This document shows, piece after piece, positions 1-61,743 of a stretch of DNA of 64,000 nucleotides. Both the position numbers and the translations under genes were made by a program. Within the stretch, counting starts at the first letter, position 1, and the number at the start of each line of letters is the position of its first letter. Below the pieces are notes generated by a model. The model was not told the origin of the DNA. It saw nothing but the letters and a program-made list of their open reading frames with translations, and ran no database searches. The stretch spans positions 186,001-250,000 of the forward strand of contig NIVC01000827.1 in the NCBI GenBank assembly GCA_002269645.1, read 5' to 3'. This DNA comes from Macrostomum lignano (lineage: Eukaryota).

Positions 1-72
1 TCATGGCGGTGTTTGTCATTGAAGTCCGAGTTGGAAAAGGAAGCGAATGGAGCAGATCCGGGATGCACTCAC

Positions 73-5760: not shown

Positions 5761-5870
5761 ACCGACGCATGACTTAGCTTTTTCATAAAACTATTTGTCG
5801 GTGTAATGCAGAAGTACGATGGGTACTTTAAATTACCCTGCATTTTCCATCAACGCCGGGTAACGTCGGC

Positions 5871-9964: not shown

Positions 9965-11481
9965 TTCTTCAAGCCCTGCGTGGAGCGTCAGCAAGCGAGC
10001 TGAAGACACTGGAGATGCTTTTCGAGCTAAAACAGCCGAATTGATGGGAAAGCTGCATTGGGGATCAGTTTAAAAGGCGTGCAGCAGATTTTGATCGCAA
10101 TAACATACTTTATTCACAAGCTTGTCGAGAAAATTCTGCTTGAAAAAGAAGCATAGCGACAGGCGCTCCAAATACTAAACCAATTTTGCAGACTTTGAAT
10201 TTTTCCATAGGTTTTTGAAAGAGACAATATTCAGAACTGAGATGCTATACGAATTTATCGCTAAAAACTGGAAACTTCCAGTGTCGGCAATGCATTTCGC
10301 TGCGAGAGCGGTTGAGATTCAGCTTTCCATGGGCCTATGTTGTTGCTAAGTAAATTGGAGTTTTGCCTTCTCAAATTATGACTAGCAAAAAATCATTATG
10401 CAAAAGTAGATAATTTCGAATTTAGACTCAATGTTTTTGACGAAATATTTACACGCCTGCTCAATTCCGAGCCGATATGCGTGTCTGGAAGAACTGGAAG
10501 CTTCCGTATAAATCTATGAATATAGCCGTTCGATTGGCTCTTCTTGCTTGCTCTTGTTCTTTGCAGCTGTCTCCTGGCACCTATTTCTCGCCTAGTGGTT
10601 GCCTAGTGGTCGGACTCACTACGTACTCAAGCGTCGGGGTTTGACTCGGAACGATTTGCGCCCCTGACAAACTATATCTCAAAAGCACTAAACTAACCTG
10701 TTGCTAGGGGGGGGGGTCGGCTCTGCCCTTGCAGGGGTGGCGGAGTGGGGATTTGAACGCAACTGGTTGCGTTGGATGCAGCCCTCCCCTTTTCCAAGCC
10801 TCTGCCCTCACAGTAAATTCAGTCCCTCCCCGTCAACGGGGCATTCTTCTGTTCATCTCCAGGAAGGGCCTCTCCAGCTGTTTTCAGCTTGTCCCCCGGC
10901 CGGTCTGATCTCGTCTCGTTGCCAGAGGGTGCGCGGCCGTTGTTGATCTGCTGTTTTTCCGCGGGCCTGCCCTCCGACCCGGCTCTGGTCGGTGTGCTCT
11001 GCGACGGGCTGGCTGGCTGAAATGATGGAGCGCGCGGGCTCAGGACGTGTCTCATAGCTCATGAGTTTTAACTCTTATAATGATAGCTCTGCTCCTTAAT
11101 ATACGAATTCAGTACAGCTGCAGGCCAATGCATTCCTTGCCTCTGCTGTGTGTCACGCAAACGAATTGTTTCACCGGAAACCTGATGAAAATAAACTTAA
11201 ACCAGCAGCAGTTTATTTAGCAGGGCACAGGCTAATTCTGTGCTGCAGGCAGAGCCATGGACAACAGCCTTAAGTTGAATGCTTAACATCAGTGGGAATT
11301 CAGTACCGTGTATTTTCTCTATCAGTACCGAGCGCTTCATCTCACAGGTTTCTTTTGCGTTACAAAAAATGTTTCAGTTTGAACAAGTTTTCAAATTTTC
11401 AAAGTTGTTTAAAAACTGCTTGGGCGCTCGATTTTGCAAGTGTAAGCGGCAGAAATCTTCTGTGCCATCATGCTGGTGCTG

Positions 11482-11994
11482 TTACAGAAGCAGCATCTCA
11501 AACTCCTTCAGCGAGTAGTAGAAGCCAAAATTAAACCTCCAAATAACACTCTGTGCAAAAGCACCTCCAATGGCAGCAGATGCGTCTTTGTACTCTCCGT
11601 TCGGAAGGGTGGTGAAACAGCTCCTAAACCACCAGGCACCTTTATGACTTGTTGCGCAGTTGCCAGTCCTCGTGTCGTGATCGGCGTCCTTCGTGGTGAA
11701 CTGCATGCCGCTGTGACTTGTGAAGCAGTCGCCGATGCCGGCGCTGCCGGAGAAGCCGGACACGCTCAGCCGGTAGTTGTCCGACTCGGGACCCACGGAG
11801 AAGCTGGAGTACTCAGCCCAGTGCTCAGAGTCGTTCCACGCCTTCATCAGGATCCTCAGCTTCCGAGGACCAGAAGCAGTGAGAGCGTGGAGAGAGTTCA
11901 GGCCTGGGAAGATGCGGACGTCATGGCGGTGTTTGTCATTGACAAAAGGAAGCAATTGAGTTGGAAAAGGAAGCGAATGAAGCACATCAGGGAC
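11482..11994 (-). pseudogene. FReD copy 3: intact exon 3 (11903-11482) plus most of intron 2; exons 1-2 absent
   Basis: Exon 3 is 422 bp and open (GLNSLHALT...YYSLKEFEMLLL*); intron homology to copy 2 ends near 11995. Confidence 0.85.
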
Positions 11995-12214
11995 ATCTTC
12001 CCAATTTTCCCTACCGGGCTCGTCCGTGATGCTGGTAGTCATTTACTTTATTGGGGCTAGAAGTTATAAAATGTTGAATAATTTTGCAGTGAAGCGAGGT
12101 TGGAGGCTGCGGCACCAGCACTGGGGAGATAGGCGGCAATGCAGAGCGATAGGAGAGAAGAATGCACTGCTGTAGGCCTAGCTGCGGTGCGGCACGTGGG
12201 AAAGAGTCAGAGCT

Positions 12215-13402
12215 GGTGAGCATGATGTCCAGCGATTCCCCGGGGTTCTCAGCGAGCCGGCCATCCGGTCTTTTAATGACTGAGAGCTTTGACATTTTGT
12301 CGAGGGTGAGAGCCTTAACCACGCGTGAAGTAGGGCGGGTGCCTTCTAACTCCGCGCAGTATTGGCGCCACTTGTCGGACTTGGCTTTCCTGGTTTCACA
12401 CTGAAAGTCCCGAATCGCGTCCTGATAGGCGGCCAGGTCAGCTGGGTCCTTGCTCTTGCGAGCTTTCCGTTGGAGGCACTTTGCCTTGCGCCGGAGGGAT
12501 ACAAGCGCCGGGTGCCACCAAAGGGCGGATTTTTTGCCTTTGTAGGCTTTAAGAGGACAGGAAGCCTCATGAGCTGTCAGGACGGTCTTGCTGAGCAAGT
12601 CTGCAAGGTCATCCACTTCCTGACAGGTGGTTGGAGCAGCGGTAGTCAGCTGATCTGTCTGGCATTTCAGGGTTTCCGCGAAAGCGTTCCTTTTCCACAG
12701 GATGTTAGGTTTGGGGCCAGAGGATTGCAATCGAAAGCGAACGAAACGATGATCAGACAGAGACTCCTCTTCGTCCCACACCTCCCAGTCCTTGACCAGA
12801 GGAGCCAGGCCGTGGGAGACGAGGGTCTCGTCGAAGGCCTCCGTCCATCGTCCGTTGTCGAAGGTTTGAGTTTCACCTGTATTGCAAAACTTAGTATTGG
12901 TGGTGCAGATATAAGCCAGGAGTTCCTCGCCTCTGCTGTTGGACGTGTTACTGCCCCAGTGTGTGTGGTGCGCGTTAATGTCGCCCGCCACCAGCAGCTG
13001 GAACCTGCGGTCAGAGCAGTAGTCCACGAGGGAGGTGAGGTTAGGTGAAACCACGGGACCGTCGCCAGGAATGTAAATCGAGGCGATAATGATCGTGCGG
13101 TTGGCGATGATGTGATTGGATTGAATGGCACAGAGGTCTCTGTCAGAGAGGTCCTGTCTGTGCCAAGCTTTGAGATGGGTAGATACGAAAATGGCTGCTC
13201 TGGGGTTTTGAGTGTCCTAAAAACAGTCAAAACCAGCAGGAATATTCGGAATCTTACCTTTCTTCGTCCAGGGCTCCTGAAGTAGGATGATGCCCGGTTT
13301 TGCGAAGTTGGCCACCTGCATCAGGTTGGTCGAGGCCGCGATGCAGTGGTGCAGGTTCAGCTGCAGGATGTCCACTCTCGGAATTCCACGGATGGTCCGC
13401 AC
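12215..13402 (-). pseudogene. LINE ORF2 N-terminal APE endonuclease and linker, with a nonsense codon
   Basis: ORFs 13217-13402 and 12011-13054 are in the same frame, joined across a single TAG. Confidence 0.85.
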
Positions 13403-18020: not shown

Positions 18021-18650
18021 TAGGCTCACTAAGTAGATAGGTAGTTGATTCCAAATTCATCTGAAAGCAAGATTGCAAGGATTTGAAGCAGTGCTTTTTC
18101 AGAGAGCTGCCCCAGTTCCGCACCAGTTCATTGGGTCAGGGACGCACGCAGGAGTTTTGTGCGTCCAATAATTTTGTGAAGTGGCTTCTGTTGCCAGCCG
18201 GTCATTTTGCTCAGTGATGCATCTCAAAGTCTGTGGTTTGAAAAAATGCAGATAGAAAAGAGACCTGTTTTAAGACTAATAGGTAAGTTAATTTAAATGA
18301 ATTCAGGTGCCAACTGCTCAGAGTGGCTGCGAGTGCATCCGAGAGATGGATCCGATTGAAAGGGTTAGAGTTGCTCACTGTTTCTCCAAACTTTTGAAGG
18401 CCATTCTGTGCAGAAGTTTTCCGGCAGGCAATAAAAGTCGGAGTCCATCGCTTTTGAATGCAAAGGGGATTTTGTCATGGGTATCTTTATTGTCAGTAGT
18501 ATCGAGCGCTTTATCTGACGGATTTCTTCGCTGCGCAACAAAAGTTTTGGACAAATTTTCAAAAACGTCTATGTTGCTTCAAAACTGCTTGAGCGCTCGA
18601 TTTTGCAAGTTGCAGCAGCAGAAATCTTCTGTGCCATCATGCTGGTGCTG

Positions 18651-19681
18651 CTACAGAAGCAGCATCTCGATCTCCATCAGCGAGTAGTAGAATCCGAAGT
18701 TATATTGCCAAATGACTCCCTGTGTAAAAGCACCTCCAATGGCAGCAGATGCGTCTTTGTACTCTCCGTTCGGGAGGGTGGCGAAACAGCTCCTAAACCA
18801 CCAGGCACCTTTATGACTTGTTGCGCAGTTGCCAGTCCTCGTGTCGTGATCGGCGTCCTTCGTGGTGAACTGCATGCCGCTGTGACTTGTGAAGCAGTCG
18901 CCGATGCCGGCGCTGCCGGAGAAGCCGGACACGCTCAGCCGGTAGTTGTCCGACTCGGGACCCACGGAGAAGCTGGAGTACTCGGCCCAGTGCTCAGAGT
19001 CGTTCCACGCCTTCATCAGGATCCTCAGCTTCCGAGGACCAGAAGCAGTGAGAGCGTGGAGAGAGTTCAGGCCTGGAAAGATGCGGACGTCATGGCGGTG
19101 TTTGTTATTGAAGTCCGAGTTGGAAAAGGAAGCGAATGGAGCAGATCCGGGATGCACTCACCGATCCAGTAGTTTCCGTCGGGTCCCTCGCCGAACTCGC
19201 TCTGGTACTGAGTCCAGTTGCGGTAAAAGTCCACTGAGCCGGACACCCTGTGCTGCACGGTGGTCCAGCAGTCACTGCCGGCTGTCTGCAAGGTGACACA
19301 ACAGGTGTGTCAGCTTTTATGCTCTGCGTAAAAGCGTGGCTGTGATGCTGACACATCTAACAGAGTGACTCACCCACACTCGCTGAGCTCCCTTGTTCGC
19401 ATTGCGGCACTTCCTGCAGTGGCTCAGGCCCATGCGGCATCTGAACTGAGCGCACAGGCCGGAGCTGGCGTTGAACGCCACCAGGTGCACAGCGGAATCT
19501 CTGCTGGCACGCACGGTGCAATCCAAGTCGCTTCGGACAGGCAGCGACCTCACGGCCTCGTACTCGGAGAGGCTCTCGTGGCCAAGAGACCACTCTCGCC
19601 CAAGCGATGAGGCCTCGGGTGCAGCGGGCTGTTGTGCCATCAGCAAAATCAGAGCGGCGTGGATCACTATGTACTTTTCAT
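18651..19681 (-). CDS. FReD copy 4 (exons ~19681/19667-19374, 19285-19162, 19072-18651), ~280 aa; start codon ambiguous
   Basis: Open spliced frame with phases 0 and 1; FBG motifs FSTKDADHD-type and GAWWFRSC; the nearest upstream ATG (19681) is one base out of frame. Confidence 0.8.
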
Positions 19682-20695
19682 CGCGATTTCCTGGAATTCA
19701 TTTGGGGAAAATATCTTGCTAGTTGTGTACGAGTCGTACTAAATAATAAGAAATTTTAATTTTACATTTGGAATAGGTGGATTCATTTTGTACGATCAAT
19801 CTACGAGTAGTCACTTGATTTCTAAACGGTCGAGAGAGCGTCGAGTCAGAGATGAATTGTTCTGTACAGATCAAACAGTAGAAACGTACCGTTTACGGAG
19901 ATTTATAGATAGAGGCTAACGTTAAGCAGGGATGCAGAGCTGTTGCGACTCACTCCCTATCGCCAGGCTTATCTCAAGAACAGCCGCGCGAGCCCAAATA
20001 TTTATGGGCTGCTTTTTCAAGCAACGCCAGTCCTCACAGCCTGGCGTGAAGGCCCATAGCAACAAGCGATGGAATGCCGGGATAAGACAATAGAAAACGC
20101 CTGTCTCAGCTCGTCCTGCATCTTTTCTGGAAACTCAGTTGCCAGTAACGAAGTAATTGGCAAGCTCGTGGATCTGTCAGTTAGAGTTCAAGGGCTACCA
20201 GGAATACGAGTATACTCATTAAAAAAACATTTATACTCAAATCCACGTGGCTGATGGACAGACTGCTTGTTCGGACACTGCAGCGCCCCTGCGAGTGCAA
20301 TGTAGATTGAAGAGTTTTTAATTAAAACACAGTTTGCACTCCATGTAGAGAGCATCTTACACCTGTCTGTAACTGTTGCGTAGGGTGTACAATTTTTGTG
20401 TACAAAATATCATTATAATTAATATCTATCGCCGGGGCACTGATTAGCGCTCGTCTGTTTCGCTGAGTCATTTCCTGTTTCGAAAATAGTAATTTCCTCG
20501 GATGTTACATCCGGCTTCCGTTGCCAAGTCGAAGTCCAGATCCGTTATTGTTAGTTTCCATGCGCGTTTGCTTCTTTATTTTTATGGCAAATGAGAGTAC
20601 AATACAAAGTACGAAGTACAATGAAAGTAAATTTATTAAAAAAATACATTCTCATAAATACAAAATACATTTATTTATAACACAATATATTTATT

Positions 20696-20701
20696 TTTAT
20701 T
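20696..20701 (-). terminator. Candidate REV3L polyadenylation signal AATAAA
   Basis: About 35 nt beyond the distal end of the 3' UTR satellite, in AT-rich sequence; a second AATAAA at 20690-20695. Confidence 0.5.
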
Positions 20702-20735
20702 GATTTATGATAGTGAAACTTCAGTATACTCGTAT

Positions 20736-23700
20736 TCACAGAAGTGCCTCAGTCACAGAAGTGCCTCAGTCACAGAAGTGCCTCAGTCACAGAAGTGCCT
20801 CAGTCACAGAAGTGCTTCAGTCACAGAAGTGCCTCAGTGACAGAAGTGCTTCAGTCACAGAAGTGCCTCAGTCACAGAAGTGCCTCAGTCACAGAAGTGC
20901 CTCAGTCACAGAAGTGCCTCAGTCACAGAAGTGCCTCAGTCACAGAAGTGCCTCAGTCACAGAAGTGCCTCAGTCACAGAAGTGCCTCAGTCACAGAAGT
21001 GCCTCAGTCACAGAAGTGCCTCAGTCACAGAAGTGCCTCAGTCACAGAAGTGCCTCAGTCACAGAAGTGCTTCAGTCACAGAAGTGCTTCAGTCACAGAA
21101 GTGCTTCAGTCACAGAAGTGCTTCAGTCACAGAAGTGCTTCAGTCACAGAAGTGCTTCAGTCACAGAAGTGCTTCAGTCACAGAAGTGCCTCAGTCACAG
21201 AAGTGCCTCAGTCACAGCAATGCCTCAGTCACAGAAGTGCTTCAGTCACAGAAGTGCCTCAGTCACAGAAGTGCCTCAGTCACAGAAGTGCTTCAGTCAC
21301 AGAAGTGCTTCAGTCACAGAAGTGCTTCAGTCACAGAAGTGCTTCAGTCACAGAAGTGCTTCAGTCACAGAAGTGCTTCAGTCACAGAAGTGCTTCAGTC
21401 ACAGAAGTGCCTCAGTCACAGAAGTGCTTCAGTCACAGCAATGCCTCAGTCACAGAAGTGCCTCAGTCACAGAAGTGCTTCAGTCACAGCAATGCCTCAA
21501 TCACAGAAGTGCCTCAGTCACAGCAATGCCTCAGTCACAGAAGTGCCTCAGTCACAGAAGTGCTTCAGTCACAGCAATGCCTCAGTCACAGAAGTGCCTC
21601 AGTCACAGAATTGTCTCAGTCACAGAATTGTCTCAGTCACAGAAGTGCTTCAGTCACAGAAGTGCTTCAGTCACAGAAGTGCCTCAGTCACAGAAGTGCC
21701 TCAGTGACAGAAGTGCCTCAGTCACAGAAGTGCCTCAGTCACAGAAGTGCCTCAGTCACAGCAATGCCTCAGTCACAGAAGTGCTTCAGTCACAGAAGTG
21801 CCTCAGTCACAGAAGTGCCTCAGTCACAGAAGTGCTTCAGTCACAGAAGTGCTTCAGTCACAGAAGTGCCTCAGTCACAGAAGTGCCTCAGTCACAGAAG
21901 TGCCTCAGTCACAGAAGTGCCTCAGTCACAGAAGTGCCTCAGTCACAGAAGTGTCTCAGTCACAGAAGTGCCTCAGTCACAGAAGTGCTTCAGTCACAGA
22001 AGTGCCTCAGTGACAGAAGTGCCTCAGTCACAGAAGTGCCTCAGTGACAGAAGTGCCTCAGTCACAGAAGTGCCTCAGTCACAGAAGTGCCTCAGTCACA
22101 GAAGTGCCTCAGTCACAGCAATGCCTCAGTCACAGAAGTGCTTCAGTCACAGAAGTGCCTCAGTCACAGAAGTGCCTCAGTCACAGAAGTGCCTCAGTCA
22201 CAGAAGTGCCTCAGTCACAGAAGTGCCTCAGTCACAGAAGTGCCTCAGTCACAGAAGTGCCTCAGTCACAGAAGTGCTTCAGTCACAGAAGTGCCTCAGT
22301 GACAGAAGTGCTTCAGTCACAGCAGTGCCTCAGTGACAGAAGTGCCTCAGTCACAGAAGTGCCTCAGTCACAGAAGTGCCTCAGTCACAGAAGTGCTTCA
22401 GTCACAGAAGTGCCTCAGTCACAGAAGTGCCTCAGTCACAGAAGTGCTTCAGTCACAGAAGTGCTTCAGTCACAGAAGTGCTTCAGTCACAGAAGTGCTT
22501 CAGTCACAGAAGTGCTTCAGTCACAGAAGTGCTTCAGTCACAGAAGTGCTTCAGTCACAGAAGTGCCTCAGTCACAGAAGTGCTTCAGTCACAGCAATGC
22601 CTCAGTCACAGAAGTGCCTCAGTCACAGAAGTGCTTCAGTCACAGCAATGCCTCAGTCACAGAAGTGCCTCAGTCACAGCAATGCCTCAGTCACAGAAGT
22701 GCCTCAGTCACAGAAGTGCCTCAGTCACAGAAGTGCTTCAGTCACAGCAATGCCTCAGTCACAGAAGTGCCTCAGTCACAGAATTGTCTCAGTCACAGAA
22801 TTGTCTCAGTCACAGAAGTGCTTCAGTCACAGAAGTGCTTCAGTCACAGAAGTGCCTCAGTCACAGAAGTGCCTCAGTGACAGAAGTGCCTCAGTCACAG
22901 AAGTGCCTCAGTCACAGAAGTGCCTCAGTCACAGAAGTGCTTCAGTCACAGAAGTGCCTCAGTCACAGAAGTGCCTCAGTCACAGAAGTGCTTCAGTCAC
23001 AGAAGTGCTTCAGTCACAGAAGTGCCTCAGTCACAGAAGTGCCTCAGTCACAGAAGTGCCTCAGTCACAGAAGTGCCTCAGTCACAGAAGTGCCTCAGTC
23101 ACAGAAGTGTCTCAGTCACAGAAGTGCCTCAGTCACAGAAGTGCTTCAGTCACAGAAGTGCCTCAGTGACAGAAGTGCCTCAGTCACAGAAGTGCCTCAG
23201 TGACAGAAGTGCCTCAGTCACAGAAGTGCCTCAGTCACAGAAGTGCCTCAGTCACAGAAGTGCCTCAGTCACAGCAATGCCTCAGTCACAGAAGTGCTTC
23301 AGTCACAGAAGTGCCTCAGTCACAGAAGTGCCTCAGTCACAGAAGTGCCTCAGTCACAGAAGTGCCTCAGTCACAGAAGTGCCTCAGTCACAGAAGTGCC
23401 TCAGTCACAGAAGTGCCTCAGTCACAGAAGTGCTTCAGTCACAGAAGTGCCTCAGTGACAGAAGTGCTTCAGTCACAGCAGTGCCTCAGTGACAGAAGTG
23501 CCTCAGTCACAGAAGTGCCTCAGTCACAGAAGTGCCTCAGTCACAGAAGTGCCTCAGTCACAGAAGTGCCTCAGTCACAGCAATGCCTCAGTCACAGAAG
23601 TGCCTCAGTCACAGAAGTGCCTCAGTGACAGAAGTGCCTCAGTCACAGAAGTGCCTCAGTCACAGAAGTGCCTCAGTCACAGAAGTGTCTCAGTCACAGA

Positions 23701-23846
23701 AGTGCCTCAGTCACAGAAGTGCCTCAGTCACAGAAGTGCCTCAGTCACAGAAGTGCTTCAGTCACAGCAGTGCCTCAGTCACAGAAGTGTCTCAGTCACA
23801 GCAGTGTCTCAGTGACAGAAGTGCCTCAGTCACAGAAGTGCCTCAG

Positions 23847-23860
<14 letters not shown>
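20736..23860. repeat. 17-bp satellite TCACAGAAGTGC(C/T)TCAG, ~184 units, overlapping the REV3L stop codon
   Basis: 3125 bp of tandem 17-mers. Confidence 0.98.
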
Positions 23861-39401
<15,541 letters not shown>

Positions 39402-39710
39402 GGCTGCTGCCGGGCAAGACGGAGCTGCAACAGACAACAGGTGCCTGCTGTTGCTAGGGGCAGAGCTCAACTCCTACTCGCAACCCCGCTCCTCAGTCCG
39501 AGATGAAACTTCTGTGTCTCTACCGCAACGTGTCTTATGCTATACAGGAGTTGGCAGAGATTTCATTATCAACTCTGAGCTGTGTTCTGATTGTCAAAAT
39601 AAATAAATGGAATTGAATACACTGTAGATACAGACACAGGTAGTCAGATGGGGTACTTAGATAGGGATGATGGACAGACAGAAAGTAGGAGCCAGACAGA
39701 AGGGTAAATA

Positions 39711-40350: not shown

Positions 40351-41768
40351 ATGCACAGCCTACACAAACAGCACAAGCGCAACAAAGGAGAGAAGAGCAG
40401 CGAGTCCCAGCGGCTTATTAATAGGCCACAGCTCAACACTGCGGCAGTGCAGGACAACGGGGCTCCATGCGGAGCAGGCCTTCGTATTGGACCATCATTT
40501 ATTTCGCGCTTTGCTTTGCAATTCGTGTCAGTCACACCTTAAATTTGAAATTAAAACACTGCTAAGCAACAGAGTTTTCAACAGCAGATGAGCAAAGGCG
40601 AGTCGTCGGCAGGACGCGCGGTCGGGGCAGTCATGGGGAAGTTTGCACTTAATGGTCACCGTCACCGCAGGCGGAGGGGCGCGAATGCTTGCTACAGGTA
40701 AACAAGAAATAATGGATAGTAAAAAATATAAAAAACCACGGCATCACTGAGGCAGCCGACACCTGGCAATGCTGACCGCAGCCCCCAGCTCAGGCGGGAG
40801 GCACCCCAGCCAACACAGGTAAAATAGGAAAGAAGTACTGACTCTAGACAACTCAAAACCGACGAGATGTCGTGGTAACAGTCACCAAAAAGTCGTCCAA
40901 GATTCAAGAGTCTGGGGCGTACACTCGCGGTAGAATCACTGAGAATTACGTCTGAGGCGCATCAGCGTCACTATATTGACAGAATCGCTAATACTCATGG
41001 GCGACTTTTTATGACTCTTTTACAATCCCGCAACTCACGTGATGCGCTCGCGACTCAACAGTCGTTAAAAAGTCACAAGTATCACCCCTTAGAGTCGCTA
41101 GAGTCACAAGTGGGTTGTTTGCAATGACTCGTTAGAGCGATTCTTGTCACGGCGGTAACGTTTTCAACTGACTGACAGAAGACAAGCCAGAGCGATTGCG
41201 ATAAAAAAACCGTTATCGATTATCACACACGCGCTATAATCAGCGATGAAGCGAATAAACACGAAATCGGACTAAATTATATAAGGCAATTTTGCGTATA
41301 ATGCTACTAGCCAAATCGCAGCTGAGTAGCATATCGCTTAGCAAGTTCAGAGAAGGAAAATTCGAAGTTCAGTTCAGTATGCATGAATTATGAGCTCTCC
41401 GATGGAAGACGGCAACTTCAGTTGCACAGCTAAATAGCATGAACTGAATTTATAGAAAAACACAAGCTAAATATGAATCAAAAATCTATTATTTATGAAT
41501 CAGGCATGCTGTAACTGTCATGTACACGCAAAAAACGGAATAGATAATCAGAGAAAGTTGAGGATCAGGAAAAAGAAATAGACAAATAAAAATTTGCCAC
41601 AGGAATGTACACACACAGGATTAAATTAGCATCTTATCTTCGTTAAAAACAACACCACCCCCAGTGCAGTCTGACTGACTACTGAAAGTAGCGAGGAAAG
41701 AGCAGAAGAAAACTGGCGAGCGCGGGGCGGGGAGAGAGAAGGGGAGGCTGCGCTGGGGCGGCCCGTCA

Positions 41769-41993
41769 TCACTTGTCGGACTTGACGCTGCCGTTGCTGA
41801 GCGACGCCATGGGGATCCGGTTGCTGTTGTGGTCGGCCTTGGCGCCGCCGTCGCCCGCACCGCCGCTGCCGCCGCCCAGGCTGGGGTCGGAAGCGACCCG
41901 CCTGCTGTACACCGTGTCTTCTTCGTCTGAGCTCAGGCTGAAGCTCATGCGGCCGCCGGACTCGTTGCCATTGTTCAGCGGGGCGTAGAACAC
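41769..41993 (-). CDS. KIAA0319L: KIAA0319-family exon 8 (cytoplasmic tail and stop)
   Basis: VFYAPLNNG...[11 protein letters not shown]...DK*. Confidence 0.85.
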   Translation of the reverse strand: MFYAPLNNGNESGGRMSFSLSSDEEDTVYSRRVASDPSLGGGSGGAGDGGAKADHNSNRIPMASLSNGSVKSDK

Positions 41994-44900
41994 CTGCGGG
42001 TTGGGGCGGCCGGAGTCTCTGTGCCTGGCCTGAAGTGCTGCCTGGCCTCCAATATACTTTCTATCCCAAGCATTTCAATCACCTACTCTCTCCCACTCGC
42101 CCTTTCCTTTAAGCAAAAACAACCGGAAGCACCAACTGGAAGCACCAAGGACACAACCGGAAGCACCAAGAACACAACCGGAAGCACCAAGAACACAACC
42201 GGAAGCACCAAGAACACAAATGGAAGCACCAAGAACACAACCGGAAGCACCAAGAACACAAATGGAAGCACCAAGAACACAAATGGAAGCACCAAGAACA
42301 CAACCGGAAGCACCAAGAACACAACCGGAAGCACCAAGAACACAACCGGAAGCACCAAGAACACAGCCGGAAGCACCAAGAACACAAATGGAAGCACCAA
42401 GAACACAACCGGAAGCACCAAGAACACAGCCGGAAGCACCAAGAACACAAATGGAAGCACCAAGAACACAGCCGGAAGCACCAAGAACACAAATGGAAGC
42501 ACCAAGAACACAGCCGGAAGCACCAAGAACACAAATGGAAGCACCAAGAACACAACCGGAAGCACCAAGAACACAACCGGAAGCACCAAGAACACAACAG
42601 AAAGCACCAAGGACACAACCGGAGGCACCAAGGACACAACCGAAAGCACCAAGAACACAACCGGAAGCACCAAGAACACAACCGGAAGCACCAAGAACAC
42701 AACAGGAAGCACCAAAAACACAACCGGAAGCACCAAGGACACAACCGGAAGCACCAAGGACACAACCGGAAGCACCAAGGACACAACCGGAAGCACCAAG
42801 GACACAACCAGAAGCACCAAGAACACAACTGGAAGCACAAAGAACACAACCGGAAGCACCAATAAAACAACCGGAAGCACCAAGTAGACCACCAGAAGCA
42901 TCATAAACACAACCGGAAGCACCAAAAAGACAACCGAAAGCAGCAGAAGGCCTCCAATTAAGAAATATTCCTCTCACCTTATCCCTTGACCCGCCGCCGC
43001 CAGCCATCATAGCCGCAGCTTTCCTCAGCCGGCGAACTTTGCTGCCGCTGCCCGTCCGCAGGTGAGCAGCCGCAGCCGCAGCGCTGGCCCGCCGATAGCG
43101 CAGGCAGCAGTACAGCAGCCAGACCGCGGCGCAGAAGCCCAGCAGGCTGATGGTCACCCCCAGAGACACGTACACCACCGACCAGTCGCAGTTGGACTCG
43201 CCATCGCCGAATCGAACACGCAGCGGATTCTCCATCCAGAAGGAGGCGCAGACGCACTGTCTGGTGGAATTGTCGCAGTAGCCCCTGTCCGAGCAGCCCA
43301 GCTGGCAGACCTCCGTGTGCAGCTCCAGCACCGGGAACTCCAGCAGGGTGGCTGGCAGCCGGCGCTTCAACACGGCGGCCAGCCGAGGTCCCGGCAGGTA
43401 GGTGCCGTTGGCGAAGCCGGCCGACAGGCGCATGACGATGCTGGCCTGCCTCGGCCGCAGACCCAGCAGGCGCAGGTTGCAGCCGGGGTGCGGGCCGCGC
43501 AGAGTCAGCTGCATCTGCGACATCAGGTTGGACAGGTCCGACTGGCGCAGTGCCGACGGGTCCGCCCGAAGCTCAAGGCTGGCCACCGAGGCGGCGTGCG
43601 GCCAGGGCCGGACAAGGATGGCCGCATCGGCTGTCCCGGTGGCGCCTTCCGAGTCCTTGACGGTCAGGCGGAAACTGTAGCGGCCGGGCAGCAGGCCGAG
43701 CAGCAGCAGGCGGGGCGACGCGTCCGAGCCGTTCAGCACCTGCCCGACGGCCAGGGAGACGTCTTGCCTGCGGCGGGTCGGAGGCGGGGGTCATTTAAGG
43801 TCAATTAGCGCTGGAATGAGGCCATCTGGGGTCATTCTTCACTTTCTAAGAAATCAGGTCACTCATTCTATCTGAAAAATGGGGTCATCTGGGGTTACTT
43901 TAAGGGATCATCTAGAGGTCATTCTGAGTTCAGCCTACACTATGCAGGTATAATGGGGTCATCTAAGGTCGCTGTCCGACCTCCGAATAGCCAACAATCC
44001 CCGCACGGCGCACCTGGTCCACTTGTACTCCACAATGCCCTTATCGTCCCAGCTCTTGGAGGCGTCAAGCGCAACCAACGTAGCCCCGGTGCCGTCCATG
44101 TCGACAACCCGATCGCCGCCGGCATCGGCCTTCGGCGCCTGATTGGGGCCCGGCTTGACCGTGACGGTGACCACCGCCGATCCAACGCCGCCGTCCAGAT
44201 CGACAGCCTCGGCTCGCAGCTTGTAGACTCCGGCCTGCAGGTTGGTGAGGGTGACGCTGGGCTGGGTGGCGTTGGCCAGCTTCGCGCTGCCGGGGCCGGT
44301 CAGCAGAGTCCAGCGCCACGACTTCACGCCGGTGTCGTCAACGGCAGACGCGTTCAGCACCAGACGGGTGAGCGGCAGTTCGACCTGAAATTTCATAGCG
44401 TTGGGTGGCGCATAGCCTTCTTAAATTTGTAAATCTCGTACTTTTGTGAATTTTGCGTACTTTTGTGCATTATAAGTACTTTTGTGCATTTAATGTACTT
44501 TTCTGCATTACATGTACTTTTGCGAATTTGTGTACTTTTGTGCTTTATATGTACTTTCGTGAATTTTTGTGTACTTTTGTGCACTATATGTATTTTTTGC
44601 ATTATATGTACTTTTGTGACTTTTGTTTACTTTTGTGCATTACATGTACTTTCGTGAATTTCGTGTACTTTTATGCATTTTATGTACTTTTGTGCATGTT
44701 TGTTTTAAACTCTAAATATGATTTTGACCATTTTCGCATCGTTCCTCCCATCCGATCCATCGAATGTACATCTATACATCATATGTACATTATAACCCTT
44801 GTGTATATCCTAATATACACAGTACATTCTAAGTAACTGGTTTAAATTTTTGTTTAAGCAGATACAATGAAATCACTGACGCCAACTCACAGTCAGCTCT

Positions 44901-47900
44901 GGGGGCAGCAGTGTCACCACTGGCAAAGCATTCTTAGGCCTGCGTTTAACCAGCACGTTGACGGTTGCCGAGTCCGTCTGGCCGCGGGCGTCAGTGACGG
45001 TCAGTTCGAATGCGTAATCGCCTTCGACTAGGCCGGACAAGTGCAGGACTGGCGTGTGCACTCCCTGCGGTGGGGTGGCGGGGAGTCGACAAGTGCTCTT
45101 GTGCGAGCTTAGCTTACTAGGAATTAGAAACTGCTTTGAAATATTTTAATGAAAATGGGTAATGTAAAAAGGAAGTTGGTTTTTTATCAGCCTAAATACC
45201 GGAAGGTGGTGCTTTGAAGGCCTATTCTAAAGACTGGAAGTTGATTTTATAAAGACCGGAAGTTAATGCTTTAAATGCTGGAAGTTTATGCTTTAAATGC
45301 CGGCAGTTAATGCTTTAAATGCCGGAAGTCGATGCTTTAAATGCCGGAAGTCGATGCTTTAATGCTGGAAGTTGATGCTATAAAGGCCGGAAGTTGATGC
45401 TTTAAATGCCGGAAGTTAATGCTTTAAATACCGGAAGTTGATGCTTTAAATGCCGGAAGTTGATGCTTTTAATGCCGGCAGTTAATGCTTTAAATGCCGG
45501 AAGTTAATGCTTTAAATGCTGGAAGTTGATGCTTTAAATGCCGGAAGTTAATGCTTTAAATGCTGGAAGTTGATGCTTTAAATGCCGGCAGTTAATGCTT
45601 TAAATGCCGGAAGTCGATGCTTTAATGCCGGAAGTTGATGCTTTAATGCCGGAAGTTGATGCTATAAAGGCCGGAAGTTAATGCTTTAAATACCGGAAGT
45701 TGATGCTTTAAAGGCCGGAAGTTGATGCTTTAAATGCCGGAAGTTAATGCTTTAAATACCGGAAGTTGATGCTTTAAATGCCGGAAGTTGATGCTTTTAA
45801 TGCCGGCAGTTAATGCTTTAACTGCCGGAAGTTAATGCTTTAAATGCTGGAAGTTGATGCTTTAAATGCCGGAAGTTAATGCTTTAAATGCTGGAAGTTG
45901 ATGCTTTAAATGCCGGCAGTTAATGCTTTAAATGCCGGAAGTTGATGCTTTGAATGACCTAATCTCAAGACCGGAAGTTGTTTCTTTAAAGACCGGAAGT
46001 TGTTGCTTTGAATGACCTAATCTCAAGACCGGAAGTTGATTCTTTAAAGACCGGAAGTTGTTGCTTTGAATGACCTAATCTCAAGACCAGAAGTTAATGC
46101 TTTAAAGAGCCCAATCTTAAAACCGGAAATCGATGCAATAAAATTGCGTAATTTAATGACCGGAAGCTGGTGCAACAAGGGCAAAATAAACGATACAAAT
46201 CAAAGCAGACAAACTGCCTACCTGCATATCGGCGCTAAGATGGCTGCCCCCTTTCTGCCGCCACATATAGCTGACAATGCCGTGATCATCTGTGCTGGCA
46301 TTGCCGTACAGAGTGATGTTATTCTGAGGCAGGTAGATGACGCTGCTCTGGCCAGCGCTGGCCTTGGGCTTGTCGTCCGGCTCGGGAATGACGGTGATGT
46401 TTGCCGTGGCCGAATCGCTCAAACCTTTGGCGTCCTGCACAGTCAGTCGGATCACGTAGAAGCCGGCTTTGAGTTTGTTCAACTGGAGGATCTGCTGGTC
46501 CTGGGAGACGCTGTGCAAATCCTGGGCCGTCAGCGGACCGTCCACCACCTGCCAGTGGTAGGACTCGATCTTCTGGTCTCCGTCAACGCTGCCGCTGCCG
46601 TCCAGGATGACGTTGTTGGGCAGCTGGATGGATAAGGATGCCGGTTTGATTACCGCCTTTGGCGGCTTGCTCTTGTGCTTCGCCGGTTTCACCGTTACCA
46701 TGACAACGGCTTTGCCAACGCGATTCGAATCCGTTTTGTCAGTGACGTCGACCTGCGAGTAATTGGGAAAGGATTTACACACATCCTGTATCTATATCAC
46801 ACACACTCGGATGTAGATACGAGTATAGAGGATTTGCACACAACTGACCGGAAGTGGATATAGAGGATTGGCACGCAAATGACCGGAAGTGGATATCGAG
46901 GATTGGCACGCAACTGACCGGAAGTAGAGATAGAGGATTTGCACACAACTGACCGGAAGTAGAGATAGAGGATTTGCACACAACTGACCGGAAGTAGAGA
47001 TAGAGGATTTGCACACAACTGACCGGAAGTAGAGATAGAGGATTTGCACAAAACTGACTGGAAGTGGATAATAGAGGATTTGCACACTAACGACAGGAAG
47101 TAGAGATAGAGGATTTGCACAAAACTGACCGGAAGTGGATAATAGAGGATTTGCACAATAACGACCGGAAGTAGAGATAGAGGATTTGCACACAACTGAC
47201 CGGAAGTAGAGATAGAGGATTTGCACACAACTGACCGGAAGTAGAGATAGAGGATTTGCACACAACTGACCGGAAGTAGAGATAGAGGATTTGCACAAAA
47301 CTGACCGGAAGTGGATAATAGAGGGTTTGCACACTAACGACCGGAAGTAGAGATAGAGGATTTGCACACAATTGAGCGGAAATAGAGATAGAGGATTTGC
47401 ACACAACTGACCGGAAGTAGAGATAGAGGATTTGCACACAACTGACCGGAAGTAGAGATAGAGGATTTGCACACAACTGACCGGAAGTAGAGATAGAGGA
47501 TTTGCACACAACTGACCGGAAGTAGAGATAGAGGATTTGCACACAACTGACCGGAAGTAGAGATAGAGGATTTGCACAAAACTGACCGGAAGTAGAGATA
47601 GAGTATTTGCACACTAACGACCGGAAGTAGAGATAGAGGATTTGCACACAATTGAGCGGAAATAGAGAAAGAGGATTTGCACACTAACGACCGGAAGTAG
47701 AGATAGAGGATTTGCACAAAACTGACCGGAAGTGGATAATAGAGGATTTGCACACTAACGACCGGAAGTAGAGATAGAGGATTTGCACACAATTGAGCGG
47801 AAATAGAGATAGAGGATTTGCACACAACTGACCGGAAGTAGAGATAGAGGATTTGCACACAACTGACCGGAAGTAGAGATAGAGGATTTGCACACAACTG

Positions 47901-50900
47901 ACCGGACGTAGAGATAGAGGATTTGCACACAACTGACCGGGAGTAGAGATAGAGGATTTGCACAAAACTGACTGGAAGTGGATAATAGAGGATTTGCACA
48001 CTAACGACCGGAAGTAGAGATAGAGGATTTGCACAAAACTGACTGGAAGTGGATAATAGAGGATTTGCACACTAACGACCGGAAGTAGAGATAGAGGATT
48101 TGCACAAAACTGACCGGAAGTGGATAATAGAGGATTTGCACACTAACGACCGGAAGTAGAGATAGAGGATTTGCACACAACTGACCGGAAGTAGAGATAG
48201 AGGTTTTGCACACTAATGACCGGAAGTGGGTTGAGGATGCGCGCACTAACGACCGGAAATGGGTTAAGGAATTGCACACTAATGACCGGAAGTGGATACA
48301 GAGGATTTAACACTAATGAACGGAAGGTGTGGATAGAGAAACTATTCATTACGCGCTGAAACTAGCTAATCTACCAATAGTAGACTAATAAGTAGCAATT
48401 GTTTATTTTTCTTGTCTCTAAGTGAAAAAATATGTATGTAATAATTCTTCACAGTTAATCCTTTCGAGACTCGCGTAAGTTTGAGTAACTTGGTTTAGGA
48501 AAGTGGGGAAAAAGAAACACTTCAGTGAACGGAGACTAGGGGTAGAAATTGTGCAGCATTGCATAGCTGGGGCACGCAAACTATTAGAACTGCAACAGCG
48601 AGGAAGCCTTATAACTACTGCCCACCCCCACACAAGCAGCCAGTTAATTAATTCTTTAGCGCCAGAACGGAATGAGCCAGTTGTTAAAAGTGCACTCAAC
48701 TCAGAGAGTCAAGTCGCGTCCTTGACTTCACTATGTGGCGAATATTAAATAGTGGCCAGTATTGAAACTTTATTGAAAAAACTTGAAAGCTTCAGCAGTT
48801 AGAAAAATGACAACACACGCCGTACAAAGTTAGAGAAATTTCTACTTATAAAAATTGAATTAATAAACTCTCCATTTCAGTGGGCCAGTTTCAAATGCCA
48901 GATCAGTTTGAATTTGATCGAATCCACAGGTGTTCCAGGTCAATATCGAACTCCAGGTATGCCAGGAGTCAATACCTAATCCCAGGTATGCCAGGAGTCA
49001 ATACCTAATCCCAGGTATGCCAGGAGTCAATATGAAATCCCAGGTATGCCAGGGGTCAATATGAAATCCCAGGTATGCCAGGGTCAATATCGAATCCCAG
49101 GTATGCCAGGGTCACTATCGAATCCCAGGTAATCCAGGAGTCAATATTGAATCCTAGGTATGCCAGGAGTTAATATCGGATCCCAGATGTTCCAGGTCAA
49201 TATCGAATCCCCGATATGCCAGTTATGCCAGAAGTCAATATCGAATCCCAGGTATGCCAGGGGTCAATATAAAATGCTAGGTGTTCCAGGTCAATATTAA
49301 ATCCCAGGTATGCCAGGGTCAATATCGAGTCCCAGGTGCTCCAGGGGTCAATATCAAATCCCAGGTATGCCAGGGTCAATATCGAATCCTAGGTATGCCA
49401 GGGGTCAATATCGAATCCCAGGTATGCCAGGGGTCAATATTGAATCCCAGGTATGCCAGGGTCAATATCGAATCCCAGGTATGCCAGGGTCAATATCGAA
49501 TTCCAGGTGCTCCAGGGGTCAATATCAAATCCCAGGTGTTCCAGGGGTCAATATCGAATCCCAGGTATGCCAGGGGTCAATATCGAATCCCAGGTATGCC
49601 ATGAGTCAATATCGAATTCCAGGTGCTCCAGGGGTCAATATCAAATCCCAGGTACTCCAGGGGTCAATATCGAATCCCAGAAATGCCAGGTGTCAAGTTG
49701 AAACCCCAGGTATGCTAATCAGCAAAGGATAAGCTCACCTGCAGAACGTATTTGCCTTCAACCAGCTCGCTAAGCTTCAGGCTAGCTGTATTCCGGTTTT
49801 GGAACTGGCCCTTCCTGGGTCCCGAGATCACCTTCCACGAGTACGCCAGACGCTTGGCAGCGGCCCCCGTGGGCTCCGGGATGATGGAGGCGTGCAGCTC
49901 GATGCTGTTGAGAGGCAGCTCGATGGTGCGGTTGCTGCCGGCGCTAACAATGAGCTGCTCGCGCTTGCTCGGAGCTGGGCGCGGGAAAAAGGGAAGCGGA
50001 GAGGGCGCCAATGCAATTAAACTGCGCGGGTTTATCCTCAGGTTGATTCACAAGCACGAATTTGAGCATGTGAAATAAAAATAAAATATTCTGGTGTTTC
50101 ATGGAAAATCCGAGATTATTGATAAAAATCATCTCATACCTCAGAGGGTAAATAAACTGGTCAAAAACCACAAAACTTAATTGATATAAACTATTTTTCG
50201 TAAATCGCAAATCGAAAAAATGAAATAAAATTCAATGCCCAGATTTAAATGCAGTTAATAATAGACTTTTTAAAAAACTCACTTTGTAAACTTGAATCTA
50301 AATTATCATTATCTCAATCCCACAATCACAATTCCAGATTCCTAATTCCAGATTCCCGCAATCGAAAATCTAGAATACCATTATCCCAACTCCAGAACCT
50401 CATTATCCCAACTCCAGAACCTCATTATCCCAACTCCAGAACCTCATTATCCCAACTCCAGAACCTCATTATCCCAACTCCAGAACCTCATTATCCCAAC
50501 TCCAGAACCTCATTATCCCAACTCCAGAACCTCATTATCCCAACTCCAGAACCTCATTATCCCAACTCCAGAACCTCATTATTCCAACCCCAGAACCTCA
50601 TTATCCCAACTCCAGAACCTCATTATCCCAACTCCAGAACCTCATTATCCCTATTCCAGAACCTCATTATCCCTATTCCAGAACCTCATTATCCCAACTC
50701 CAGAATCTCCTTATCCCAACTGCAGAATGCCAACAATCTCAGTCTAGAGTGCTTCGCCAAACCTTTTTGCGGCAAACGATTTGAAATAGATTGACAATAC
50801 AGAGCCAAAGCACAATAGTGAAGGGCTCCGGTCTGCAGCACAGCAACTCAGCACGGGTATTGTCAAATAATTTGCTTGGCTAAATTAGGCTACACTAATA

Positions 50901-56505: not shown

Positions 56506-56634
56506 AGTAAGCTAGAATTGTAACATTTTTGCAATCATTGCTATATCAATTTTATTTTTTGACTATTCTCTATTGGGTAGGCCCTATCATATTACAAAAT
56601 TGATGCAAAATGTTAGATAGGCCTACTATATTAT
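56506..56634 (+). repeat. Left copy of the 129-bp direct repeat flanking the LINE
   Basis: Identical to 57937-58065. Confidence 0.95.

Positions 56635-57936
<1,302 letters not shown>

Positions 57937-61686: not shown

Positions 61687-61743
<57 letters not shown>
61687..61743. repeat. (TC)n microsatellite in the 5' UTR intron (61401-61803)
   Basis: Visible. Confidence 0.95.

What the first reader, a model, noticed from the sequence alone, without database searches (positions are those of the whole stretch)
20736..23863. 3.1-kb satellite born from the last 17 nt of the REV3L CDS, amplifying its stop codon ~184 times
Seen: the CDS ends GTC GAA GCA CTT CTG TGA. Its terminal 17-mer TCGAAGCACTTCTGTGA matches the satellite unit CTGA(A/G)GCACTTCTGTGA at 15/17 positions, so the first unit is coding. 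The array ends precisely on a TGA followed by unique AT-rich sequence with AATAAA ~35 nt later, reconstructing a compact ancestral 3' UTR. Inference: a snapshot of satellite birth by tandem duplication at a stop codon, leaving the protein intact but inserting 3 kb of repeat into the 3' UTR of a translesion polymerase. Possible effects on mRNA stability, NMD or RNA-protein binding.
Basis: partly seen in the sequence, partly recalled or inferred. Interest (0 to 1): 0.75.

Follow-up and report, generated by a model that had tools for sequence, protein, structure and literature searches.

The report
Minisatellite seeded by REV3L's stop codon
In a Macrostomum flatworm, the last 15 coding bases of the DNA polymerase zeta gene (stop codon included) were copied about 184 times into a 3.1-kb repeat just after the gene; this is a tidy but ordinary example in a genome where such repeats fill almost all non-coding space.

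Summary
Window 20736-23863 (sense = minus strand) holds 184 units of 17 nt in perfect register: 94% matches, no indels.

- **Boundaries:** Unit 1 is the end of the REV3L (Pol zeta catalytic subunit) coding sequence, GTC GAA GCA CTT CTG TGA. The array is followed by 34 unique nt and a cluster of AATAAA signals.
- **Direction of origin:** Orthologue tails (vertebrate ...YLRQLLEQF*, here ...[10 protein letters not shown]) show that the coding end is native. The array therefore derives from the coding tail plus stop codon, not the reverse. The protein is unchanged. The inferred 3' UTR before the first AATAAA grows from ~35 nt to ~3.15 kb.
- **Age:** "Snapshot of birth" is overstated. There are 11 unit variants, and a 68-unit (1,156 bp) block was duplicated very recently (1 substitution, 2 unit indels).
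- **Context:** The source is a Macrostomum flatworm. 34% of the window is private minisatellites, REV3L introns are 73-96% array, and arrays stop 5-9 nt from splice sites. An array abutting a stop codon is the expected extreme of this local pattern.
- **Untested:** No empty allele, transcript data or genome-wide search was available, and no function is indicated.

Verdict: a real feature, a new member of a known kind, of modest interest.

The parts
20736..23863 (-). The alternative phase is 20734-23861. The majority unit in the sense orientation is CTGAGGCACTTCTGTGA.
   Evidence: TRF period 17, 183.7 copies, 94% matches, 0 indels. Unit-by-unit listing and variant counts. Period-17 boundary profile.
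23847..23863 (-). Unit 1, the progenitor copy: the last 17 nt of the REV3L coding sequence, (G)TC GAA GCA CTT CTG TGA. The stop codon is at 23849-23847.
   Evidence: Translation ends ...[14 protein letters not shown]. 15/17 match to the A-variant unit. The tail aligns with orthologue C-termini.
23847..24323 (-). Last REV3L exon (477 nt including the stop). It encodes the CysA/CysB metal-binding C-terminal domain. GC3 is 0.87, falling to 0.33 in the last 15 codons.
   Evidence: Acceptor ccccgcag|GTTCTGCC and the in-frame spliced model. Pfam zf-C4pol. GC3 profile.
23541..23846 (-). Head of the array (units 2-19). It is enriched in rare unit variants: 7 of 18 units, against 31 of 165 in the rest.
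22385..23540 (-). Higher-order block copy 1 (units 20-87, 1,156 bp).
   Evidence: Unit-level and nucleotide-level self-alignment: 1138 of 1139 aligned bases are identical to copy 2, plus two whole-unit indels.
21229..22384 (-). Higher-order block copy 2 (units 88-155, 1,156 bp), directly adjacent to copy 1.
20736..21228 (-). Tail of the array (units 156-184). It contains a third partial copy of the run of seven A-variant units (unit-level match ABBBBBBBAA to block copy 1) and a run of 12 identical majority units.
20702..20735 (-). 34 nt of unique 3' UTR between the array and the first AATAAA: ATACGAGTATACTGAAGTTTCACTATCATAAATC. It contains CTGAAG, identical to the first 6 nt of the A-variant unit.
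20575..20709 (-). Poly(A)-signal cluster. CATAAA starts at 20709 and AATAAA hexamers start at 20701, 20695, 20675, 20637 and 20580 (sense-strand 5' base given).
   Evidence: Hexamer scan: no hexamer between the stop codon and 20709.

Best explanation
This is a young, locus-specific minisatellite. It arose in place by tandem duplication of a 17-nt segment made of the last 15 nt of the REV3L coding sequence (GAA GCA CTT CTG TGA) plus 2 adjacent nt.

- **Protein unaffected:** The duplicated segment contains the stop codon, so every extra copy lies downstream of translation termination and the protein is unchanged.
- **Progenitor preserved:** The first copy stays under protein-coding selection and so preserves the progenitor sequence.
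- **Growth in two modes:** Unit-scale slippage or unequal exchange spread a few variants (A to G at unit position 5, and others). Large unequal exchanges followed; the latest duplicated a 68-unit block and took the array from about 2 kb to about 3.1 kb.
- **Most likely neutral:** This Macrostomum genome generates private minisatellites everywhere selection allows, and each array grows until it meets a functional boundary. Here those boundaries are the stop codon on one side and the poly(A) signal region on the other.
- **Likely consequence:** The 3' UTR is lengthened from about 35 nt to about 3.15 kb upstream of the first AATAAA.

Shown: the anatomy, the native coding end and the block duplication. 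Inferred: the empty ancestral state, the slippage or unequal-exchange mechanism, transcription through the array, and neutrality.
For: - **Perfect in-register array whose first unit is the coding tail**.
- **The coding end is native.** Owenia Pol zeta aligns to its last residue at 23850. Animal orthologues end 25-28 residues after the DCP of CysB with R-[QE]-h-h-[ED]-x-(x)-F/L, and the window's tail fits the same columns.
- **Composition.** The low-GC3 tail begins 24 nt upstream of the repeat homology, so the shared 15 nt are compositionally continuous with unique coding sequence.
- **Ancestral variant.** Unit 1 carries the A-variant state, which 50 of the other 183 units share. This fits A being ancestral.
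- **Edge versus core.** Rare variants concentrate in the head next to the coding sequence, and two adjacent 1,156-bp blocks are 99.9% identical. That is the usual pattern of old edges and a recently homogenised core.
- **No related repeat nearby.** There is no copy of the unit elsewhere in the window, and it is unrelated to the 27 other array units beyond chance.
- **Poly(A) signals.** No poly(A) hexamer lies inside the array, and a cluster starts 35 nt after it.
- **Local context.** 34% of the window is array. The last six REV3L introns are 73-96% array, and arrays stop 5, 7 and 9 nt from exon junctions.
- **Lineage.** The source is Macrostomum. In M. lignano, simple and tandem repeats make up 15% of the genome, and ORF-to-poly(A) gaps that are 'repetitive' were common enough to need a merging rule in the annotation pipeline (PMC5730564).
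Against: - No unexpanded allele, homeologue or congener locus could be retrieved. The empty site is reconstructed, not observed.
- The direction of derivation rests on distant orthologues (49% identity or less) and a loosely conserved tail motif.
- The two bases linking the units (CT) match neither flank exactly (TC upstream, AT downstream). At least one substitution or a junction filler must be assumed.
- Only 64 kb of the genome was searchable for other copies of the unit.
- There are no transcript data. Copy number depends on assembly accuracy.
Confidence: 0.8

Rival explanations
1. Capture rather than birth. A pre-existing repeat (a dispersed satellite family or a repeat carried by a mobile element) landed in or spread into the 3' end of REV3L. 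It overwrote the last codons and now supplies the stop codon, so the coding tail derives from the array.
For: The relation between unit 1 and the other units is symmetrical in principle. The majority unit differs from the coding tail at 3 of 17 positions. The rest of the genome could not be searched. TE-derived tandem repeats are a documented route (PMC6947457 and PMC3389668, listed).
Against: The tail has the length and residue pattern of Pol zeta orthologues. The low-GC3 tail extends 24 nt beyond the shared 15 nt. No related unit occurs in the window among 27 arrays or as single copies. The upstream flank is the coding sequence itself, and the downstream flank runs straight into the poly(A) signals, with nothing that looks like an element terminus on reading it (not scanned formally).
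Confidence: 0.07
2. Assembly artefact. The array, or at least its length and its duplicated 1,156-bp block, was produced by mis-assembly of repetitive reads.
For: Zero indels over 3.1 kb, and two adjacent blocks 99.9% identical, are also what an assembler-made duplication would look like. Tandem repeats are a known source of assembly error (PMC6868369, listed).
Against: The array has 11 ordered variants, a distinct head and a distinct tail. The two blocks differ by one substitution and two unit indels, so they are not carbon copies. About 27 other arrays in the same window show the same kind of structure. The genus is known to be rich in tandem repeats. The junction with the coding sequence, which is the core of the finding, does not depend on copy number.
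Confidence: 0.05
3. Selected 3' UTR element. The array is kept because it regulates REV3L mRNA, for example as a multivalent platform for an RNA-binding protein or small RNA (159 GCACUU sites), as a long-3'-UTR decay trigger that keeps this mutagenic polymerase low, or as a fail-safe wall of stop codons.
For: If the first downstream poly(A) signal is used, the whole array is in the mRNA. There are 159 GCACTT and 51 AGCACTT motifs, and 353 TGA close all three frames within 16 codons. GCACUU is the complement of the AAGUGC seed known from vertebrate microRNAs (PMC5311252).
Against: Arrays of the same kind fill introns and intergenic DNA nearby, so no special function is needed. Very recent block duplication and variant turnover indicate drift, not conservation. 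The predicted RNA structure is no better than shuffles, z = -1.5. There is no Rfam match. No evidence was found that flatworms have AAGUGC-seed microRNAs.
Confidence: 0.05

Closest known systems
Minisatellites / VNTRs within gene 3' UTRs (classic example from general knowledge: the 40-bp VNTR in the human SLC6A3/DAT1 3' UTR; human VNTR survey 10.1101/2020.11.03.367367, listed)
   Same: Head-to-tail units of 10-60 bp, a kilobase-scale array, interspersed variant units, a location in a transcribed untranslated region, and growth by slippage or unequal exchange.
   Different: Here the first unit overlaps the coding sequence and contains the stop codon, so the progenitor copy is identifiable and held in place by protein-level selection. 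Polymorphism was not tested.
Minisatellite birth by slipped-strand mispairing (Taylor and Breden 2000, Genetics 155:1313, cited in PMC3599147)
   Same: A short unique segment is duplicated in place and then amplified. The flanks still show the single-copy progenitor.
   Different: That model needs short direct repeats one period apart. Here only CTG recurs at a 17-nt offset in the reconstructed ancestor. A CTGAAG 6-mer in the flank sits 28 nt from the coding tail's GAAG, not 17 nt. The initiating event is therefore not resolved.
Tandem-repeat-rich genome of Macrostomum lignano (Wudarski et al. 2017, PMC5730564; Wiberg et al. 2023, PMC10468722)
   Same: Same genus. Simple and tandem repeats are 15% of that genome, and repetitive stretches between ORF and poly(A) site were common enough to need a merging rule.
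   Different: Those papers give bulk fractions only. Neither paper, as read, describes the private-unit, intron-filling architecture or an array seeded by a stop codon.
Higher-order repeat structure of satellite DNA produced by unequal crossing-over
   Same: A multi-unit block (68 units) is duplicated as a whole, and the array edges are more variant-rich than the core.
   Different: A single small euchromatic, genic locus with only about 2.3 block copies. No evidence of a chromosome-wide family.
Tandem repeats derived from transposable elements (PMC6947457, PMC3389668)
   Same: A kilobase array of short units next to genes.
   Different: The left flank is the conserved coding tail of REV3L and shares 15 nt with the unit. 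No element sequence is visible in the flanks (read by eye, not scanned for terminal repeats).

Membership tests
Minisatellite (VNTR-type tandem repeat) | Head-to-tail copies of a unit of roughly 10-100 bp | tested here: met
   Period 17, 183.7 copies, 0% indels. 184 in-register units.
Minisatellite (VNTR-type tandem repeat) | Array of about 0.5-30 kb at a single euchromatic locus, with interspersed variant repeats | tested here: met
   3,128 bp inside a gene-dense stretch, with 11 unit variants in an ordered pattern. Single-locus status was tested only within the 64 kb.
Minisatellite (VNTR-type tandem repeat) | Copy-number polymorphism between individuals or haplotypes | not testable with these tools
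   Only one haplotype is available. The 99.9% identical duplicated block shows recent length change but is not population data.
Satellite DNA family (dispersed or heterochromatic) | The same monomer is present in long arrays at several genomic locations | tested here: inconclusive
   No other copy in the window at up to 3 mismatches. Unrelated to the 27 other array units. 0 hits in metagenome contigs, which is uninformative. The rest of the genome could not be searched.
TE-borne tandem repeat | The array is embedded in element sequence (terminal repeats or element ORFs in the immediate flanks) | tested here: not met
   The upstream flank is the REV3L coding sequence, sharing 15 nt with the unit. 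The downstream flank is 34 nt and then poly(A) signals. Retroelement ORFs lie more than 7 kb away. The flanks were read by eye; the repeat finder was not run on them.
DNA polymerase zeta catalytic subunit (REV3/REV3L), the host gene | REV3 N-terminal domain, B-family exonuclease and polymerase domains with YGDTDS, and a C-terminal CysA/CysB C4 module | tested here: met
   Pfam REV3_N 1.4e-17, DNA_pol_B_exo1 8e-8, DNA_pol_B 6e-42, zf-C4pol 1.9e-8. Best database hits are named Pol zeta. YGDTDS is read in exon 26135-25806.
DNA polymerase zeta catalytic subunit (REV3/REV3L), the host gene | The C-terminus ends about 25-28 residues after the DCP of CysB, with a hydrophobic or aromatic last residue | tested here: met
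   28 residues after DCP, ending ...VEALL. It aligns column for column with ...LEQMF and ...LDQYF. Owenia aligns to its last residue.
microRNA or RBP sponge in a 3' UTR | Many seed-matched sites for a small RNA or protein expressed in the same organism, with evidence of binding or conservation | not tested
   Only motif counts were made: 159 GCACTT and 51 AGCACTT. No flatworm small-RNA data were examined. Recent turnover argues against conservation.

The most novel reading that the evidence does not exclude
In Macrostomum, in-place minisatellite genesis may be so pervasive that arrays expand to the exact nucleotide limit of selective constraint. In this gene the limits are the stop codon, 7 nt after a donor GT, and 5-9 nt before an exon. 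Array edges would then be a genome-wide, single-genome footprint of functional boundaries. Arrays seeded inside coding tails would record their own progenitor sequence. A further, less likely layer is that the REV3L array has been co-opted to hold down the mRNA of a mutagenic polymerase through a 3-kb UTR carrying 159 identical motifs.
Probability: 0.15. Interest if true: 0.6.

Novelty: new member of a known kind. Interest (0 to 1): 0.3.

Why it matters
Minisatellite origins are usually impossible to reconstruct because the single-copy progenitor decays. Here the progenitor copy is the end of a conserved protein-coding sequence, so selection has held it in place. That gives the direction of origin, the ancestral unit state and the empty-site sequence from one haplotype.

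It also shows one way a tandem duplication can start inside a gene without harming it: the duplicated unit must carry the stop codon.

Practically, such arrays break transcript assemblies and gene models in Macrostomum. REV3L is missing from the protein databases searched here. They also inflate 3' UTRs by kilobases, which matters for annotation and for expression studies in this regeneration model.

The broader pattern may deserve more attention than this single array: introns are 73-96% filled with private minisatellites that stop at the core splice signals.

Tried and rejected
- **Orthologous or unexpanded locus.** Three protein searches were run: REV3L C-terminal exons, REV3L N-terminal exon, and the neighbouring fibrinogen-domain gene. 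They gave no Macrostomum REV3L, only 49-56% hits from other phyla. Exact-match contig look-ups for the best M. lignano fibrinogen hit and for the 485-aa REV3L exon ORF found nothing.
- **Public DNA scan.** A scan of metagenome contigs for the unit dimer gave 0 hits, which is uninformative for a eukaryote.
- **Paralogous flank.** The fibrinogen-gene duplications cover only 18218-19579, so no paralogous copy of the REV3L 3' flank exists in the window.
- **Shared core with other arrays.** The best p is about 0.01 over 27 comparisons, as chance predicts.
- **RNA structure.** z = -1.5, not significant. Rfam gave 0 matches in the window.
- **Antisense coding.** The plus strand reads open for up to 532 codons, but only because the unit lacks stops in that orientation. 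Variant units break every frame, so coding was rejected.
- **microRNA-sponge idea.** The AAGUGC seed is documented for vertebrate families, but nothing links it to flatworms. Kept only as a low-probability rival.
- **First gene model.** The first spliced model failed to read through. That led to a 61-nt micro-exon at 29408-29348 and one more short intron inside 28402-28061. Neither affects the finding.
- **Literature.** Searches for a described minisatellite seeded at a stop codon found no direct precedent.
Full report

Yes. Tandem Repeats Finder reports one array at 20736-23858 with period 17, 183.7 copies, 94% matches, no indels and score 5497.

The gene lies on the minus strand. Read in that sense from 23863, the sequence falls into 184 consecutive 17-mers in perfect register, followed by unrelated sequence. 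Unit composition:
- 98 units are CTGAGGCACTTCTGTGA.
- 47 units are CTGAAGCACTTCTGTGA.
- Nine rarer variants make up the rest.
- Only 6 of the 17 positions vary at all.

Unit 1, TCGAAGCACTTCTGTGA, is the end of an open reading frame...CGT CAA ATC GTC GAA GCA CTT CTG TGA, translated ...RQIVEALL*. The stop is at 23849-23847.

After the last unit come 34 unique AT-rich bases. AATAAA follows at 20701-20696, with four more AATAAA by 20580. None of 13 poly(A) hexamer variants occurs between the stop codon and 20709.

Two details need correcting:
- 171 of the 184 units keep the terminal TGA and 13 have TCA. Each unit also has a second TGA (in CTGAGG). So 353 TGA triplets follow the real stop, and every sense frame is closed within 16 codons.
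- The repeat phase is ambiguous. Period-17 identity starts at GAAGC (23861). The first two bases after the last TGA (AT) match the inter-unit CT at one position. The array can equally be written as 183 x (GAAGCACTTCTGTGA+CT) plus GAAGCACTTCTGTGA+AT, spanning 23861-20734. That reading needs one mismatch instead of two. Only 15 nt are demonstrably shared with the coding sequence.

**2. What is the gene, and is that really its end?**

The minus strand from about 39.47 kb to 23.85 kb encodes a compact DNA polymerase zeta catalytic subunit. Pfam finds:
- REV3_N (1.4e-17) in the exon at 39048-39473.
- The B-family exonuclease domain (8e-8) in the 485-codon exon at 32392-33849.
- DNA_pol_B (6e-42) and the C4 zinc-finger module (1.9e-8) in the spliced 3' exons.

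All named database hits are Pol zeta. I mapped the 3' exons by tblastn and fixed the junctions by reading splice sites and checking that the spliced product reads through:

| Exon | Window coordinates (minus strand) | Note |
|---|---|---|
| -4 | 30343-29940 | |
| micro-exon | 29408-29348 | 61 nt |
| -3 | 28402-28061 | contains one further short intron |
| -2 | 26135-25806 | YGDTDS motif |
| -1 | 25389-24973 | |
| last | 24323-23847 | |

The annelid Owenia protein aligns through its final residue (681 of 681) to window 23850, the codon before the TGA.

Across animal orthologues the protein ends 25-28 residues after the DCP of the CysB motif. The ending follows the pattern R-[QE]-h-h-[ED]-x-(x)-F/L, for example YLRQLLEQF*, YYRDLLEQMF* and YIRKILDQYF*. 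The window has 28 residues and ends [10 protein letters not shown]. In a MAFFT alignment its last residues fall in those same columns.

Codon composition agrees. GC3 is 0.87 over the exon but 0.33 over the last 15 codons. That shift begins 24 nt upstream of the repeat homology, so the shared 15 nt are continuous with unique coding sequence.

**3. Direction and mode of origin**

A 15-nt identity at the junction cannot be chance, so either the array descends from the tail or the tail descends from the array. The tail has the family's length and residue pattern, and its composition extends beyond the shared segment. The array is therefore the derived partner.

The duplicated segment contained the stop codon. 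That is the one way a 17-nt duplication (17 is not a multiple of three) can begin inside a coding sequence without changing the protein.

Unit 1 carries A at unit position 5, a state that 50 of the other 183 units share. This suggests A is ancestral and the majority G is derived.

The reconstructed empty site is ...ATCGTCGAAGCACTTCTGTGA|ATACGAGTATACTGAAGTTTCACTATCATAAATCAATAAA. That leaves about 35 nt between the stop and the first AATAAA, against about 3,146 nt now.

The initiating event is not resolved. In the reconstructed ancestor only CTG recurs at a 17-nt offset. A CTGAAG 6-mer in the flank, identical to the start of the A-variant unit, lies 28 nt from the coding GAAG rather than 17 nt. 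The inter-unit CT matches neither flank exactly.

**4. It is not a snapshot of birth**

The array has an internal history:
- The 18 units next to the coding sequence are enriched for rare variants (7 of 18, against 31 of 165 in the rest).
- Units 20-87 (23540-22385) and 88-155 (22384-21229) are two adjacent 1,156-bp blocks. They differ by one substitution and two whole-unit indels (1138 of 1139 aligned bases identical).
- The remaining tail holds a third copy of the run of seven A-variant units (unit-level match ABBBBBBBAA to block copy 1).

Growth was therefore stepwise. It began at unit scale, and later at least one very recent unequal exchange added 1.16 kb in one step.

**5. Context changes how remarkable this is**

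The neighbouring fibrinogen-domain ORF finds 21 Macrostomum lignano proteins at up to 85% identity, and nothing above 52% from any other taxon. The window's four paralogues reach only about 85-88% over long stretches. The source is therefore a Macrostomum flatworm, either M. lignano (unannotated paralogues) or a congener.

In M. lignano, simple and tandem repeats account for 15% of the genome. The annotation pipeline there had to merge ORF-bearing transcripts with downstream poly(A)-bearing fragments when 'the spanning region was repetitive'. Transcripts overlapping repeats were also dropped from the GenBank annotation (PMC5730564). That probably explains why no Macrostomum REV3L exists in the protein database.

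In this window, 34% of the bases lie in 28 arrays of at least 200 bp. Each array has its own unit, and the 17-mer is not related to any of them beyond chance.

The last six REV3L introns are 73-96% array, and the arrays stop at the core splice signals:
- One begins immediately after the 7-nt donor GTGAGAC (array edge 29932, exon end 29940).
- One ends 5 nt (CGCAG) before exon start 30343.
- One ends 9 nt (CCCGTCCAG) before exon start 25389.

An array that fills the whole 3' UTR and abuts the stop codon is the same phenomenon at a different kind of boundary. At the local density, an array start falls in any given 17-nt window with probability about 0.7%. Across tens of thousands of genes, similar cases should recur. 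That last step is inference.

**6. Function**

Nothing points to one:
- Ten units fold no better than shuffled sequence (z = -1.5).
- Rfam finds nothing in the window.
- The open plus-strand frames are a by-product of a unit that lacks stops in that orientation, and variant units interrupt them.
- The array carries 159 GCACTT and 51 AGCACTT motifs, the complement of the AAGUGC seed documented for vertebrate microRNA families (PMC5311252). I found no evidence that flatworms have such microRNAs, and the recent turnover argues against constraint.

The most probable consequence is simply a 3' UTR about 3.1 kb longer, if polyadenylation uses the first downstream signal. That could not be checked. 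One small side effect is that the base after the stop changed from an inferred A to C.

**7. What could not be done**

No other haplotype, homeologue or congener locus could be retrieved. The metagenome scan for the unit was empty and uninformative. There were no transcript or population data. The empty site, single-locus status, transcription through the array and copy number all remain inferred.

**8. Verdict**

This is a real, well-delimited minisatellite. Its progenitor copy is the stop-codon-bearing tail of REV3L.
- 'Satellite' and 'snapshot of birth' are overstated.
- In this genome the configuration is an expected extreme rather than an anomaly.

It is a new member of a known kind and of modest interest. 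The architecture around it, private minisatellites filling introns up to the splice signals, is the more notable feature. The Macrostomum genome papers I could read did not describe it.

Noticed in passing
window 24324-31476 (REV3L introns); whole window for the totals: 34% of the window is minisatellite: 28 arrays of at least 200 bp, each with a private unit. The last six REV3L introns are 73-96% array. Arrays stop at the core splice signals: the 29932 edge comes right after the donor GTGAGAC, the 30349 edge is 5 nt before exon start 30343, and the 25399 edge is 9 nt before exon start 25389.
   Followed up: partly
window 23847-24323 (-): GC3 is 0.87 across the last REV3L exon but drops to 0.33 in the last 15 codons (CTT GAA GAA ATT CGT CAA ATC GTC GAA GCA CTT CTG). 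This is a sharp compositional switch inside the coding sequence, just before the AT-rich 3' region.
   Followed up: partly
window 2-632, 4278-5790, 11324-12042, 18218-19667 (-): Four tandem fibrinogen C-domain genes, 82-92% identical at the DNA level. Their best protein hits are Macrostomum lignano family members at up to 85-88% identity, which identifies the lineage. None is identical, so the source is either unannotated paralogues or a congener.
   Followed up: partly
window 29348-29408 (-) and inside 28061-28402 (-): A 61-nt REV3L micro-exon (…[20 protein letters not shown]) sits on a 275-bp unique island between two arrays. Exon 28402-28061 has an in-frame stop unless a further short intron (about 90 nt) is removed.
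   Followed up: partly
window 35220-35782 (-): A 16-nt-unit array lies in an open minus-strand frame in the middle of REV3L, giving [14 protein letters not shown]-type repeats. Whether it is an intron or a coding repeat in the poorly conserved middle region was not resolved.
   Followed up: no
window 41700-53430 (-): A KIAA0319-like gene (K319L-like PKD domains 8.6e-22 and 7e-18, KIAA0319_N 6e-8) lies upstream of REV3L on the same strand. Several large arrays (for example 46825-48326 and 45236-46128) fall between its coding ORFs.
   Followed up: no
window 8539-9000 (+), 12014-13216 (-), 56604-57485 (+): Retroelement fragments: an integrase core (rve 6e-17), an endonuclease/reverse-transcriptase (5e-18) and an RNase H (6e-14). 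They are interspersed with the fibrinogen-domain genes and lie in the AT-rich stretch at 54-58 kb.
   Followed up: no
window 20736-23863 (-): The array carries 159 GCACTT and 51 AGCACTT motifs, the complement of the AAGUGC microRNA seed known from vertebrates. It also carries 353 TGA and no TAA or TAG. The expansion changed the base after the stop codon from an inferred A to C.
   Followed up: partly
window 20719-20724 (-), in the 3' flank 11-16 nt after the array: CTGAAG, identical to the first six bases of the A-variant unit, occurs in the unique flank. It could be a remnant of the short direct repeat involved in the first duplication, or chance (roughly 1% for a 6-mer within 30 nt).
   Followed up: no
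window 61687-61743 and 63946-64000: Two perfect (TC)n microsatellites of about 28 units each. The second runs off the end of the window.
   Followed up: no
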